From sequence record MT028491.1: 64,000 nucleotides of DNA. One strand, 5' to 3'. Shown in pieces: positions 24,278-31,978 of this stretch (position 1 is its first letter; each line of letters begins with the position of its first letter). The notes below the pieces were generated by a model. The model had not been told where the DNA came from, did no database searches, and saw only the letters and a program-made list of their open reading frames with translations. Both the position numbers and the translations under genes were made by a program.

Positions 24278-24300
24278 AGTGAAAATCCTAAAATAAAAAA

Positions 24301-24330
24301 ACGGTCTATCACATATTTATGATAGACCGT
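24301..24330 (-). terminator. intrinsic terminator with late promoter CATAAATA in its loop
   Basis: ACGGTCTATCA-8nt-TGATAGACCGT followed by TTTTTT on minus; CATAAATA at 24314-24321. Confidence 0.75.
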
Positions 24331-24336
24331 TTTAAT

Positions 24337-24746: not shown

Positions 24747-24822
24747 TGGTGGGTAATCTTGGTTCTGACCCAAGTTCTTCGGTGCTTCAAACCGACGCAT
24801 TGACCACAGTTGCTTATTACCC
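24747..24822 (-). tRNA. tRNA-Phe(GAA) with atypical T-loop
   Basis: TCGGT-TT-GAA-GC-ACCGA arm; T-loop GTCAGAA; GGGTAAT/ATTACCC, ACCA. Confidence 0.85.
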
Positions 24823-27381: not shown

Positions 27382-28196
27382 ATGAATTGGTGCTAAAACC
27401 ATTTTATGAATTGAAACCATATCATAAAATAATCATTATTGTCAAGTCAAATCATAAATATAGCTACAAACTAATTTCAAAAGGTAGCTATAATGAAAGA
27501 CATACTATATCAACTATTTAAAGATAATGGTCGCATATCAAAAACTGATATTAGCAATCACCCGGATTTACCATCATATAACACCCTCATGAGACGTGGT
27601 TTTTCTCTTATAGAATTAAACCAAGAATTCAGCGAGCGTCAATATAATGACAATCCTGTATTGTGTTTACAATGTTCAACAGCCATCACTTTAAAGGCTC
27701 ATGAACAAGGTAATAAATTTTGCTGTAAATCGTGTTCCGCCACACACAATAATCTTAAACGTGGTAAGAAAACAAAAGAAACTTATTTTAAAATCAAACC
27801 ACCAAGAGAATGCTTACATTGTAAGAGTATTGTAACTTCCACTAATAAAAGAACAGTGTTTTGTTCAACATCATGTTCAATAGACTACCAATATCAACAA
27901 AACGTTGCTGATTGGCTTTCTGGTAAGAAACCCGGATGTAATGGTAAAACACTTTCTCTAGCACGTTATGTAAGAAGATACTTACATGAAACTAGAGGAA
28001 CAGCATGTGAATGTTGCGGTTGGGATCAAAGACATCCAGTAGATGGAAGAGTATTGACCGAAATAGATCACATAGACGGCAATGCCGCCAATAATGATCC
28101 AACCAACCTAAAGGTTCTTTGTCCAAACTGTCATTCTATGACTCCAACTCATAGAGCGAGAAATAGAAATTCAGCAAGACAAAGATGAATTGGTGC
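27382..28196 (+). mobile_element. HNH homing-endonuclease cassette flanked by 12-bp direct repeats
   Basis: ATGAATTGGTGC at 27382-27393 and 28185-28196 (overlaps tRNA-Thr 3' end); late promoter CATAAATA 27453-27460. Confidence 0.65.
27493..28188 (+). CDS. HNH homing endonuclease with zinc-finger repeats
   Basis: FCCKSCS, FCSTSC, CECCG, EIDHIDGNAANNDPTNLKVLCPNCHS. Confidence 0.88.
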   Translation: MKDILYQLFKDNGRISKTDISNHPDLPSYNTLMRRGFSLIELNQEFSERQYNDNPVLCLQCSTAITLKAHEQGNKFCCKSCSATHNNLKRGKKTKETYFKIKPPRECLHCKSIVTSTNKRTVFCSTSCSIDYQYQQNVADWLSGKKPGCNGKTLSLARYVRRYLHETRGTACECCGWDQRHPVDGRVLTEIDHIDGNAANNDPTNLKVLCPNCHSMTPTHRARNRNSARQR

Positions 28197-28264
28197 CGAT
28201 ACGAGGAATCGAACCCCGAAAACCTGATTACAAAACAGACATTATACCATTTAATTATATCGGC
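28191..28264 (-). tRNA. tRNA-Thr(TGT)
   Basis: GCCGATA/TATCGGC, TT-TGT-AA loop, ACCA. Confidence 0.92.
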
Positions 28265-28266
28265 AA

Positions 28267-28437
28267 AAGACAATGATACTGATTGAAAGGAGGACGTATC
28301 ATTGTCTTCGATATCACAAAATTTGAAAGGAGGTTGTGATATCTAAAATAGAATTAGTGAACTTTTAGCTGTCTTCAAAGCAACCTAGTAATCAGAAACG
28401 TGTGCACCATTATCTGAAAACCTGAAAAGTTCACTAA
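28267..28437 (-). ncRNA. candidate sRNA: two hairpins with CCUCCUUUCAA loops plus a third domain
   Basis: 13-bp stem 28267-79/28296-308, 10-bp stem 28310-19/28334-43, 13-bp stem 28354-66/28425-37. Confidence 0.65.
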
Positions 28438-28441
28438 ACTT

Positions 28442-28516
28442 TGGAGTCCCTTGTTGGAATTAAACCAACCTTCACTGTGTTGCAAACAGGCTTATAACCA
28501 CTCTAAGCAAAGGGAC
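28442..28516 (-). tRNA. tRNA-Cys(GCA)
   Basis: CCTGT-TT-GCA-AC-ACAGT arm, U73-CCA. Confidence 0.88.
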
Positions 28517-28589
28517 ATGTTAAATATTATTTCTACCGATTCTCGAATAACCTGTCAACTTTTTAATTTCTTTTAGGTTATTTTTATCT

Positions 28590-29084
28590 TTACGACTGGT
28601 TTTCCGAATCGACTTTTTCTTTGTATGGCTCATTGACCACCTTATTCATCCGGCGAATATCACCCATTGTGATCGATCCACCAAAGCAATAGCAAGCTGT
28701 ATAATACTGATGAAGTGCAAACACTTCAAATTCATCACCAAGCTTAGTACCATTATCAATATAGATTGAGTCTTGCAAATGGTACTTATTATCTGCCAAT
28801 TGTTCGGTTGTTAGCTCCAATTCCTTCCACACAAGCTTTCCATTTTCATCTGGAACCAAATCTTGTAGGCTTTCATTTTCACTAAGATAAGGCCACAACT
28901 TTGACGTTGCCATCATACCTTCAACTGGATTTTCATCCAAACCACCAAACGTAAAATCAAATGGATAAAGTTGTGTCTCTAGCTCAATCAAGCGATCCAA
29001 CAACTCTTCATTTGAAGCGTTTGAAAACCGATCTTCGACACGCTTACGGGTAATCTGTTCAATCTTATCGTAATCCCAAGACAT
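28590..29084 (-). CDS. hypothetical protein
   Basis: 164-aa ORF. Confidence 0.7.
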   Translation of the reverse strand: MSWDYDKIEQITRKRVEDRFSNASNEELLDRLIELETQLYPFDFTFGGLDENPVEGMMATSKLWPYLSENESLQDLVPDENGKLVWKELELTTEQLADNKYHLQDSIYIDNGTKLGDEFEVFALHQYYTACYCFGGSITMGDIRRMNKVVNEPYKEKVDSENQS

Positions 29085-29531: not shown

Positions 29532-29607
29532 TGGCGCATATGACGGGGATCGAACCCGCCTAGACTTGATCGACAGTCAAGCGATTTCACCAGAAATCAA
29601 CATATGC
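29532..29607 (-). tRNA. tRNA-Asp(GTC)
   Basis: CTTGA-CT-GTC-GA-TCAAG arm, G73-CCA. Confidence 0.9.
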
Positions 29608-29723
29608 ATATAATCTTTAATATGAAACACCGTCATAACAATGTTATGCTGCCATGACCATCATTTCATATTTTCGCCTAATTACCGATAGATGTATATC
29701 GTTTAATATAATTAGGTCTTTAT

Positions 29724-30744: not shown

Positions 30745-30753
30745 ATCTATAAA

Positions 30754-30948
30754 CTATATACGCCTACTGATCAGAAAAACCGAGCTAGGGATTGCGCCTA
30801 GCACTTCTTCCCATGGCACCCAACATCCCCTATCGGGAATTGAAGGAATCGAACCCTCACAAGGTACTTGCGCTCTTCTACTTAAACTACCGGTCTGGTT
30901 CCAAAGTTAGCTATTCTTCTCACCGTAACGATCAATAGGCATATATAG
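30754..30948 (-). ncRNA. candidate ~195-nt ncRNA with two T-loop-like hairpins
   Basis: 19-bp closing helix with 2 G:U pairs on minus strand; GAGGG-TTCGATT-CCTTC and CTAGG-CGCAATC-CCTAG. Confidence 0.65.
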
Positions 30949-30951
30949 TTT

Positions 30952-31823: not shown

Positions 31824-31833
31824 AAATAATTCT

Positions 31834-31977
31834 TTCTACAGGCGGGAATCGAACCCATTTTCAGCGTGTACGTTGCTTACTTTGTTAAACCACATCCTAT
31901 AAGGATATGAAGCCTTCCTTAAGCCTGACACATGCTTAACTAGTCGCACATGAAAGGCCCGTTTAACGCCTGCAAAA
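31834..31977 (-). ncRNA. ~140-nt RNA with acceptor-like stem and T-arm but expanded core
   Basis: TTTTGCAGGC/GCCTGTAGAA closing helix, GGGTTCGATTCCC T-arm, internal hairpins; no CCA. Confidence 0.6.
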
Positions 31978-31978
31978 C

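What the first reader, a model, noticed from the sequence alone, without database searches (positions are those of the whole stretch)
28267..28437. Twin hairpins presenting anti-Shine-Dalgarno loops (CCUCCUUUCAA)
Seen: two adjacent perfect stems (13 bp and 10 bp) with unrelated stem sequences share the loop sequence TTGAAAGGAGG on plus, i.e. CCUCCUUUCAA on the tRNA-transcribing minus strand. A third 13-bp-closed domain lies next to them. Established: CCUCCUUUC resembles the 3' anti-SD tail of alphaproteobacterial 16S rRNA, and rhizobial sRNAs such as AbcR1/2 and the alpha-r14/cuckoo families repress mRNAs through loop-exposed anti-SD motifs. Inference: a phage sRNA excised between tRNA-Cys and tRNA-Thr that masks strong SD sequences of host mRNAs, for translational shut-off or reprogramming. 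If it is instead expressed from plus, the GGAGG loops could be a decoy for ribosomes or an RNA-binding protein.
Basis: partly seen in the sequence, partly recalled or inferred. Interest (0 to 1): 0.82.

Follow-up and report, generated by a model that had tools for sequence, protein, structure and literature searches.

The report
Phage twin-hairpin RNA copying ribosome tail
Between two tRNA genes of a large Ochrobactrum phage lies an unannotated, strongly folded 177-base stretch whose two adjacent hairpins each display an exact copy of the ribosomal RNA tail that recognises mRNAs, so it is probably a small RNA that blocks ribosome-binding sites, but nobody has yet shown that it is made.

Summary
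The window is Ochrobactrum phage vB_OspM_OC (T4-like, 227.6 kb). The 177-nt spacer between tRNA-Cys and tRNA-Thr (28265-28441, minus strand) holds two abutting perfect hairpins (10 bp/14-nt loop, 13 bp/16-nt loop). Their stems are unrelated, but both loops carry CCUCCUUUCAA. A third domain closed by 13 bp lies next to them. This is not chance, and AAAGGAGG occurs nowhere else in the genome.

The first nine loop bases equal the 16S rRNA 3' tail of a bacterium from the host's order. Stem, loop and linker sizes fall inside the range of real cuckoo/ar14 (NfeR1) sRNAs of Rhizobiales. The loop motif differs at 2 of 9 positions, and the Rfam ar14 model does not match, so this is an analogue and not a member.

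The best reading (about 0.45) is a small RNA released from the tRNA transcript by tRNA processing that pairs with Shine-Dalgarno regions. Expression, processing and targets are untested. The phage has no close relative in any collection searched, so conservation and covariation cannot be assessed. As a side result, genuine ar14 RNAs sit inside phage replication modules on IMG/VR contigs.

The parts
28265..28441 (-). Whole structured spacer (177 nt), the proposed small RNA between the tRNA-Cys 3' end and the tRNA-Thr 5' end
   Evidence: MFE -54.9 kcal/mol, z -7.1. No Rfam family even at E<=10. No tRNA even with relaxed ARAGORN. Not annotated in MT028491.1.
28354..28437 (-). 5' domain: three-way junction closed by a 13-bp stem (28354-28366 with 28425-28437)
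   Evidence: z -3.7. Folds at -27.1 kcal/mol on minus against -20.6 on plus. The inner helices use G.U pairs possible only on minus.
28344..28353 (-). A/U-rich single-stranded linker between the 5' domain and the hairpins
   Evidence: Unpaired in the MFE and centroid structures.
28310..28343 (-). Hairpin A: 10-bp perfect stem, 14-nt loop (28320-28333) showing CCUCCUUUCAA
   Evidence: The motif has a mean unpaired probability of 0.985.
28266..28309 (-). Hairpin B: 13 Watson-Crick pairs plus one terminal G.U (minus strand only), 16-nt loop (28280-28295) showing CCUCCUUUCAA. It directly abuts hairpin A and is followed by UUUU and the first base of tRNA-Thr
   Evidence: The motif has a mean unpaired probability of 0.996.
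28283..28293 (-). Loop motif copy 1 (TTGAAAGGAGG on plus)
   Evidence: Together with copy 2 these are the only AAAGGAGG in the genome.
28323..28333 (-). Loop motif copy 2 (TTGAAAGGAGG on plus)
28442..28516 (-). tRNA-Cys(GCA) with encoded CCA, the upstream neighbour on the same strand
28191..28264 (-). tRNA-Thr(UGU) with encoded CCA, the downstream neighbour. RNase P cleavage at its 5' end would create the 3' end of the spacer RNA (inference)
28530..28558 (-). Promoter-like site just upstream of tRNA-Cys: TTGACA (28558-28553), 17-nt spacer, TAGAAA (28535-28530)
   Evidence: Read. The consensus scan did not list it because the second hexamer lacks the final T, so this is weak evidence.
27493..28188 (+). 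HNH endonuclease gene on the opposite strand. Its stop codon lies 2 nt from the 3' end of tRNA-Thr. It is context and the source of any plus-strand read-through

Best explanation
The spacer encodes, on the tRNA (minus) strand, a roughly 175-nt non-coding RNA. It is co-transcribed with tRNA-Cys and tRNA-Thr. Ordinary tRNA maturation sets it free: trimming or cleavage after the CCA of tRNA-Cys makes its 5' end, and RNase P cleavage at the 5' end of tRNA-Thr makes its 3' end, ...UUUU. Its working part is a pair of directly abutting hairpins. Each holds, fully unpaired in a large loop, the same 11-mer CCUCCUUUCAA, whose first nine bases copy the 16S rRNA 3' tail. Each loop would therefore pair with purine-rich Shine-Dalgarno regions (ideally UUGAAAGGAGG) and block 30S binding. 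Rhizobial cuckoo/ar14 RNAs such as NfeR1 do this with their redundant CCUCCUCCC loops. Likely targets are strong-SD host mRNAs. The phage's own mRNAs use short SDs and never carry AAAGGAGG, so they would be hit less. One phage RBS (phiOC_p395) is a possible target inside the phage. Shown: anatomy, non-randomness, loop accessibility in silico, identity to a 16S tail, geometric match to cuckoo modules. Inferred: transcription, processing, pairing, targets.
For: - Two abutting perfect hairpins with unrelated stems and identical 11-nt loop cores, giving z -8.7.
- Adjacent hairpin pairs never arose in 100 simulations.
- The loops are unpaired with probability 0.985-0.996, also within the precursor that includes both tRNAs.
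- Same strand as the tRNAs, at 0-4 nt from them.
- Asymmetry favouring minus in domain 3, and G.U pairs only on minus.
- The loop 9-mer equals the 16S tail of a Hyphomicrobiales rrn operon. That tail is the SD-pairing element (PMC6288834).
- The cuckoo/ar14 family is defined as 2-4 adjacent hairpins with identical aSD loops and variable stems. It is present in O. anthropi, and NfeR1 silences mRNAs through redundant aSD seeds (PMC4615179, PMC10746234).
- In 44 real cuckoo clusters stems are mostly 9-15 bp, loops 10-17 nt, and linkers mostly 0-13 nt. The phage values (10 and 13 bp; 14 and 16 nt; 0-1 nt) fall inside these ranges.
- Genuine ar14 RNAs occur inside phage replication modules on IMG/VR contigs, so phages of this host clade do carry such RNAs.
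- T4 keeps two small stable RNAs abutting a tRNA in its tRNA cluster (PMC9697503).
- AAAGGAGG is absent from the rest of the genome. GGAGG is at 0.11 of expectation, against 0.66 in T4. Phage SDs are 4-5-mers.
- The best non-self pairing site in the genome is an RBS: 13 bp, -16.4 kcal/mol, against a genome-wide mean of -3.0 and sd 2.2.
Against: - There are no expression data for this phage.
- No homologue was found anywhere, so there is no covariation or loop-conservation evidence.
- The twin stems are pure Watson-Crick and fold equally well on plus.
- The Rfam ar14 and ar15 models give no hit.
- The loop motif lies outside the nearly invariant cuckoo motif.
- GGAGG depletion is symmetrical on both strands (7 against 13). 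It sits alongside complete absence of CCWGG and CCCAG, so it may reflect DNA-level restriction avoidance and not self-sparing.
- In a rough proxy, Rhizobiales genes were only about twice as likely as phage genes to pair strongly with the loop (13.9% against 7.4%).
- The host's own 16S and mRNAs were not available.
- The 13-bp p395 match is within what chance allows genome-wide.
Confidence: 0.45

Rival explanations
1. Passive structural spacer. The hairpins and the 13-bp-closed domain only insulate the folding of the neighbouring tRNAs. They may also serve as entry or stop signals for processing nucleases (RNase E or III, 3' exonucleases), and the excised piece is degraded without acting in trans.
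For: Other inter-tRNA spacers of the same array are also strongly folded on minus: 30745-30951, 29608-29723 and 31824-31978. The two abutting stems could stack into a helix of about 24 bp.
Against: A passive spacer does not explain why two hairpins with unrelated stems keep an identical 11-nt loop core. It does not explain why that core is the exact 16S tail, or why it is the only AAAGGAGG in a genome that otherwise purges GGAGG. Loops of 14-16 nt are unnecessary for a nuclease barrier.
Confidence: 0.17
2. Protein-binding platform or decoy on the minus strand. The two identical loops on a rigid dumbbell bind a protein that normally recognises the 16S 3' tail or CU-rich RNA. Candidates are a ribosomal or initiation factor, Hfq, a phage translational regulator such as the annotated RegA, or a host ribonuclease toxin that attacks the anti-SD region. 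The RNA would titrate or recruit that protein.
For: Exact 9-nt identity to the 16S tail. Two identical, fully exposed loops at a fixed spacing. The phage carries RegA and an RNA-repair gene set.
Against: No candidate protein is linked by position or co-occurrence. Base pairing is the documented mode for the closest analogues (PMC10746234). Nothing here tests protein binding.
Confidence: 0.13
3. Plus-strand element. Read-through from the HNH endonuclease gene carries the hairpins as a 3' structure whose loops show the genome's only perfect SD (AAAGGAGG). They could act as a 30S or protein (GGA-binding) decoy, as a 3' stabiliser of the HNH mRNA, or as ribosome-binding sites for tiny ORFs.
For: The HNH stop is 2 nt from tRNA-Thr and has no terminator before the hairpins. 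The twin hairpins fold equally well on plus, at -29.1 kcal/mol.
Against: The plus strand is antisense to both flanking tRNAs. Domain 3 is 6.5 kcal/mol weaker on plus, and three pairs become A.C mismatches. No T-run follows the hairpins. The only start codons at usable spacing give a 14-codon ORF from TTG. No ORF of 20 or more codons begins downstream of either loop motif; the only one that enters the element starts upstream within tRNA-Thr.
Confidence: 0.08
4. DNA-level signal. The two inverted repeats are a recognition or cleavage site, a cruciform, or a recombination scar linked to the adjacent homing endonuclease or to replication, and the RNA is irrelevant.
For: Homing endonuclease genes sit in the tRNA clusters both here and in T4. 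GGAGG avoidance is symmetrical on the two DNA strands.
Against: The arms of the two repeats are unrelated, so no single dimeric DNA binder fits. There is no copy or paralogue elsewhere in the genome. Relatives of the HNH gene in other phages do not bring the spacer with them.
Confidence: 0.05

Closest known systems
Cuckoo / alpha-r14 sRNA family (Rfam RF02344 ar14; e.g. S. meliloti NfeR1, R. sphaeroides RSs0680a-d)
   Same: Two to four adjacent hairpins. Every loop carries the same C/U-rich anti-SD motif while the stems are unrelated. Helices are at least 6 bp and linkers at most 10 nt. The loops act as redundant seeds on translation-initiation regions. The family is present in the host genus (PMC4615179, PMC10746234). 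Measured stem, loop and linker sizes overlap. The motifs share 7 of 9 bases.
   Different: The loop motif is CCUCCUUUC, not the nearly invariant CCUCCUCCC. There is no hit to the ar14 model, while controls score 70-110 bits. The element is embedded between two tRNAs with no terminator of its own. It carries an extra 84-nt 5' domain, is AT-rich, and lies in a virulent T4-like phage.
Phage T4 small stable RNAs rnaC and rnaD (species 1 and 2)
   Same: Non-tRNA RNAs encoded inside the tRNA cluster of a T4-type phage, on the tRNA strand, abutting a tRNA within 1-6 nt, next to a homing endonuclease gene. Their function is still unknown (PMC9697503).
   Different: T4 rnaC folds with a T-arm-like hairpin and an acceptor-like stem. 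Neither T4 RNA shows twin hairpins or CCUCC loops. No sequence similarity was found.
tRNA-transcript spacer RNAs acting in trans (E. coli 3'ETS-leuZ type; recalled from general knowledge, not tested here) and phage P1/P7 c4 antisense RNA
   Same: A regulatory RNA is released from a larger precursor by tRNA-type processing. c4 blocks a ribosome-binding site with complementary sequences likely placed in loops (PMC12197685).
   Different: Those RNAs have specific single targets or sponge sRNAs. None displays a copy of the 16S tail.

Membership tests
cuckoo / ar14 (RF02344) | 2-4 adjacent hairpins, helices of at least 6 bp, linkers of at most 10 nt (PMC4615179) | tested here: met
   Two hairpins of 10 and 13 bp with a 0-1 nt linker. 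Inside the ranges of 44 real clusters.
cuckoo / ar14 (RF02344) | All hairpin loops carry one identical motif while stems are unrelated | tested here: met
   11/11 identical loop core. Stems match at 4/13 and 4/10 positions.
cuckoo / ar14 (RF02344) | The loop motif is CCUCCUCCC | tested here: not met
   The loop reads CCUCCUUUC (7/9). In real members near 117 exact motifs, only one variant 9-mer was seen. The cuckoo 9-mer is absent from the phage genome.
cuckoo / ar14 (RF02344) | Scores at or above the Rfam gathering threshold (58.8 bits) | tested here: not met
   No ar14 match in 28100-28600 even at E<=10. Positive controls score 70-110 bits.
cuckoo / ar14 (RF02344) | Stems vary among homologues by compensatory changes | not testable with these tools
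   No homologue of the phage element was found in any collection.
T4 rnaC/rnaD-type stable RNAs | Encoded in the tRNA cluster of a T4-type phage, on the tRNA strand, abutting tRNAs | tested here: met
T4 rnaC/rnaD-type stable RNAs | Sequence or fold resemblance to T4 rnaC/rnaD (T-arm-like hairpin, acceptor-like stem) | tested here: not met
   No T-arm and no tRNA-like call even with relaxed ARAGORN. No blastn similarity.
T4 rnaC/rnaD-type stable RNAs | Accumulates as a stable RNA in infected cells | not testable with these tools
   No transcript data exist for this phage.
AbcR1/2 (ar15) and other curated Rfam sRNAs | Match to the family covariance model | tested here: not met
   Only tRNA and noise hits appear at E<=10.
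Intrinsic terminator | G+C-rich stem, loop of 3-8 nt, run of at least 5 T | tested here: not met
   Not called by the scan, which does call a clear terminator at 24333-24298. The loops here are 14 and 16 nt and only four U follow.
tRNA / tRNA-like | Cloverleaf detected by ARAGORN or Rfam RF00005 | tested here: not met

The most novel reading that the evidence does not exclude
A virulent phage makes a free-floating copy of the ribosome's mRNA-recognition tail. Two exact copies of the 16S anti-SD tail sit on a rigid double hairpin, produced in bulk from its tRNA operon by the cell's own tRNA-processing enzymes. These soak up strong Shine-Dalgarno sites of host mRNAs as a translational host shut-off. 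The phage has purged GGAGG from its own genome and initiates on short SDs, so it escapes. On this reading the genome-wide GGAGG depletion and the RNA are two halves of one strategy.
Probability: 0.2. Interest if true: 0.85.

Novelty: new variant of a known kind. Interest (0 to 1): 0.6.

Why it matters
Few trans-acting small RNAs are known from virulent phages. The small stable RNAs of the T4 tRNA cluster have had no assigned function for decades. This element would link the two: a defined, testable candidate function (SD masking by a 16S-tail mimic) for a non-tRNA RNA inside a T4-type tRNA array, built on the same plan as the host clade's own cuckoo/ar14 regulators. With the side observation that genuine ar14 RNAs sit in phage replication modules, it suggests that phages of Rhizobiales repeatedly use multi-loop anti-SD RNAs. 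It also adds an unannotated gene to a published genome.

Tried and rejected
1. Conservation tests all came back empty.
- Megablast and blastn of the spacer against 50,697 phage records found only tRNA matches.
- The exact twin-loop pattern gave 0 hits in IMG/VR.
- The same pattern in metagenomes gave 120 or more hits. All were tandem or coding repeats or duplicated SD-ATG units, and none was a twin hairpin.
- A relaxed 9-mer pattern in IMG/VR gave no analogue.
- The neighbouring protein p264 has no homologue among 5.8 billion proteins or in IMG/VR.
- The nearest capsid relatives are only 55% (GenBank) and 66% (IMG/VR) identical.

2. Known RNA families, tRNA and terminator were rejected.

3. 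A coding reading on plus was rejected: there is only a 14-codon TTG ORF.

4. No paralogues exist elsewhere in the genome.

5. The Y-RNA idea for domain 3 found no Rfam support. The protein annotated as 'Ro sixty-related' hits DUF2828/DUF7788 in Pfam, not a named Ro family.

6. The self-sparing test used 15 Rhizobiales loci as a host proxy and gave only a two-fold difference. This is weak, and the proxy is biased because those loci were picked for containing cuckoo motifs.

7. Attempts to fetch an E. coli record and a plasmid rrn operon via tRNA-Ala failed. tRNA-Ile worked, but it gave an order-level relative and not the host.

Note on method: in my working notes I recalled a few short motifs from memory (16S tails, restriction sites, protein-binding motifs). 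None was used as tool input. Every pattern sent to a tool came from the window or from a paper shown by a tool.

Full report
IDENTITY AND CONTEXT
The window is bases 124001-188000 of Ochrobactrum phage vB_OspM_OC (MT028491.1). This is a 227,654-bp, 37% G+C, T4-like virulent jumbo phage of Ochrobactrum sp. POC9 (PMC7139368). The finding lies in a long minus-strand tRNA array interrupted by small ORFs and two HNH endonuclease genes. The 177 bases at 28265-28441 fill the whole gap between tRNA-Cys (28442-28516) and tRNA-Thr (28191-28264). Both tRNAs are on minus and both have an encoded CCA. Nothing is annotated there.

THE OBSERVATION
- The hairpin at 28267-28308 has a 13-bp perfect stem and a 16-nt loop.
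- The hairpin at 28310-28343 has a 10-bp perfect stem and a 14-nt loop.
- Both loops hold TTGAAAGGAGG on plus, which is CCUCCUUUCAA on minus.
- Anchored on the motif, the stems agree at only 4/13 and 4/10 positions, so they are unrelated.
- On minus a terminal G.U pair makes the two helices abut with no linker.
- A third domain, 28354-28437, is a three-way junction closed by 13 bp.

It is not chance.
- The spacer folds with z = -7.1 on minus, and the twin hairpins alone give z = -8.7.
- Perfect hairpins of at least 10 bp are seven-fold over-represented in the window.
- Two adjacent hairpins of this kind never arose in 100 Markov simulations.
- AAAGGAGG occurs nowhere else in the 227.6-kb genome.
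- These are the only CCUCC copies presented by a strong hairpin.

WHICH STRAND
The twin stems are pure Watson-Crick and carry no strand information. Several things favour minus.
- The tRNAs are on minus and touch the element.
- Domain 3 folds at -27.1 kcal/mol on minus against -20.6 on plus.
- Three G.U pairs exist only on minus.
- A near-consensus TTGACA-17-TAGAAA lies just upstream of tRNA-Cys on minus. I read it; the scan did not list it.

On plus the region would be read-through from the HNH gene, antisense to two tRNAs. It would have no terminator and no ORF of 20 or more codons starting at the loop motifs.

WHAT THE LOOPS ARE
I recovered a plasmid-borne rrn operon of a Hyphomicrobiales bacterium, which belongs to the host's order. 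Its 16S 3' end reads GATCACCTCCTTTCTAAGGA. The first nine loop bases are therefore an exact copy of the 16S tail that pairs with Shine-Dalgarno sequences. This tail is common to many bacteria and is not specific to Alphaproteobacteria (PMC6288834). The host's own 16S was not available. In the folded ensemble both motif copies are unpaired with probability 0.985-0.996, also within the precursor that includes both tRNAs.

CLOSEST KNOWN: CUCKOO/AR14
The cuckoo/ar14 family is defined as 2-4 adjacent hairpins, each loop carrying CCUCCUCCC, with highly variable stems.
- It is abundant in Brucellaceae, with five copies in O. anthropi.
- NfeR1 silences mRNAs through three redundant anti-SD seeds (PMC4615179, PMC10746234).

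I fetched real members from genomes and measured 44 clusters. Stems were mostly 9-15 bp, loops 10-17 nt, and linkers mostly 0-13 nt. The phage values lie inside these ranges.

Membership nevertheless fails.
- The motif differs at 2 of 9 positions, both C to U, and is nearly invariant in real members.
- Rfam ar14 scores the controls at 70-110 bits but gives nothing for the phage element at E<=10.

The element therefore works like a cuckoo RNA, as far as architecture can show, but is not a member of the family.

THE T4 PRECEDENT
T4 keeps rnaD and rnaC immediately after tRNA-Arg in its tRNA cluster, next to segB. Their function is unknown (PMC9697503). Their folds are unlike the twin hairpins, and T4 rnaC is tRNA-like.

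GENOME-WIDE CONTEXT
- GGAGG/CCTCC is among the most depleted 5-mers: 20 observed against 179 expected at zero order and 68 under a Markov model. That is 0.11 of expectation, against 0.66 in a 57-kb T4 sample.
- Phage genes use 4-5-nt SDs such as GGAG, GAGG, AAGG and AGGG.

This fits a self-sparing design. The depletion is equal on both strands, however, and sits beside total absence of CCWGG and CCCAG. DNA-level restriction avoidance is therefore an equally good reading.

A rough comparison with 115 Rhizobiales ORFs showed only a two-fold difference in strong predicted pairing.

Within the phage, the best pairing site outside the element itself is the RBS of phiOC_p395. It forms 13 bp with loop A at -16.4 kcal/mol, against a genome-wide mean of -3.0 and sd 2.2. 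This is a lead, and it is within chance.

CONSERVATION
Conservation cannot be tested.
- No nucleotide or pattern match to the spacer exists in GenBank phages, in IMG/VR, or in the sampled metagenome hits.
- The neighbouring gene is an orphan.
- The nearest capsids are 55-66% identical.

A SUPPORTING SIDE RESULT
The cuckoo pattern in IMG/VR returned genuine ar14 RNAs of 70-81 bits.
- They lie tail-to-tail with a phage DNA helicase, inside a replication module of processivity factor, Cas4-type exonuclease, helicase, exonuclease and methyltransferase.
- This holds on seven contigs. Five have helicases about 96% identical to each other, and two have helicases only about 55% identical to those.
- The helicase is 69% identical in DNA to that of the cultured Rhizobium phage RHph_TM3_3_14B, which itself lacks the RNA.

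Phages of this host clade therefore do carry multi-loop anti-SD RNAs.

VERDICT
This is a real, unannotated, non-random structured RNA locus.
- The most likely reading (0.45) is a tRNA-operon-embedded small RNA whose twin loops mask SD regions.
- The rivals are a passive processing spacer (0.17), a protein-binding decoy (0.13), a plus-strand SD-mimic (0.08) and a DNA-level signal (0.05).
- In novelty it is a new variant of a known kind.
- Interest is 0.6. It is held down by the complete lack of expression and comparative evidence.

METHOD NOTE
In my working notes I recalled a few short motifs from memory. None was used as tool input.

Noticed in passing
window 30745-30951 (-): A 207-nt spacer between tRNA-Leu(taa) and tRNA-Gly. 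It folds at -73.6 kcal/mol on minus against -52.1 on plus. A 22-bp terminal stem encloses a T-arm-like hairpin (GGUUCGAUUCC) and a weak tRNA-like match (18 bits; relaxed ARAGORN calls a 'tRNA-Leu(gag)'). The plan, a long stem plus a tRNA-like module, recalls T4 rnaC and bacterial Y RNAs. The record annotates a 'Ro sixty-related' protein (phiOC_p153, outside the window), but Pfam gives only DUF2828/DUF7788.
   Followed up: partly
window 31824-31978 (-): A 155-nt spacer, part of it annotated as the tiny CDS phiOC_p275. Its ends pair, and it holds a T-arm-like GGGUUCGAUUCCC next to the 3' strand. It looks like a tRNA-like RNA with a large insertion, similar in plan to T4 rnaC. No Rfam or ARAGORN call.
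   Followed up: partly
window 29535-29607 (-) and 24747-24822 (-): Two tRNA genes are missing from the GenBank record. Rfam tRNA scores are 49.1 and 39.6 bits, and relaxed ARAGORN reads them as tRNA-Asp(gtc) and tRNA-Phe(gaa). The genome paper states that Asp and Phe tRNAs are absent. The second one lies just downstream of the small annotated plus-strand ORF phiOC_p246, overlapping its last bases.
   Followed up: partly
whole genome MT028491.1 (L002-L006): CCWGG and CCCAG/CTGGG do not occur at all, against about 130-180 expected for each. GGAGG/CCTCC, CCGAG and CTCAG are 5-10-fold depleted. This probably reflects restriction avoidance. The cause of the GGAGG depletion is unresolved.
   Followed up: partly
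L481:1777-1902, L512:5196-5318, L504, L409, L406, L455, L401 (IMG/VR contigs): Genuine ar14/cuckoo RNAs (70-81 bits) lie tail-to-tail with a phage DNA helicase inside a phage replication module. The adjacency is kept between helicases only about 55% identical. The cultured relative RHph_TM3_3_14B lacks the RNA. I found no mention of phages in the cuckoo family paper.
   Followed up: partly
window 27459-27492 (+) and 27493-28188 (+): The HNH endonuclease start codon is immediately preceded by a 9-bp hairpin that buries its ribosome-binding region. The C-terminal half of the gene is 70-77% identical in DNA to HNH genes of E. coli and Cronobacter jumbo phages and of T5-like Klebsiella and Salmonella phages. 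Its stop lies 2 nt from tRNA-Thr.
   Followed up: no
record 215304-215336 (-), outside the window: The ribosome-binding region of phiOC_p395 can form 13 consecutive pairs with loop A (-16.4 kcal/mol). This is the best pairing site in the genome outside the element itself. phiOC_p395 is the first gene before two methyltransferase genes.
   Followed up: no
window 29608-29723 (-) and 24298-24333 (-): Two further strong hairpins lie between tRNA-Glu and the unannotated tRNA-Asp (z -5.4). A textbook intrinsic terminator follows tRNA-Pro, which shows what real terminators look like in this phage.
   Followed up: no
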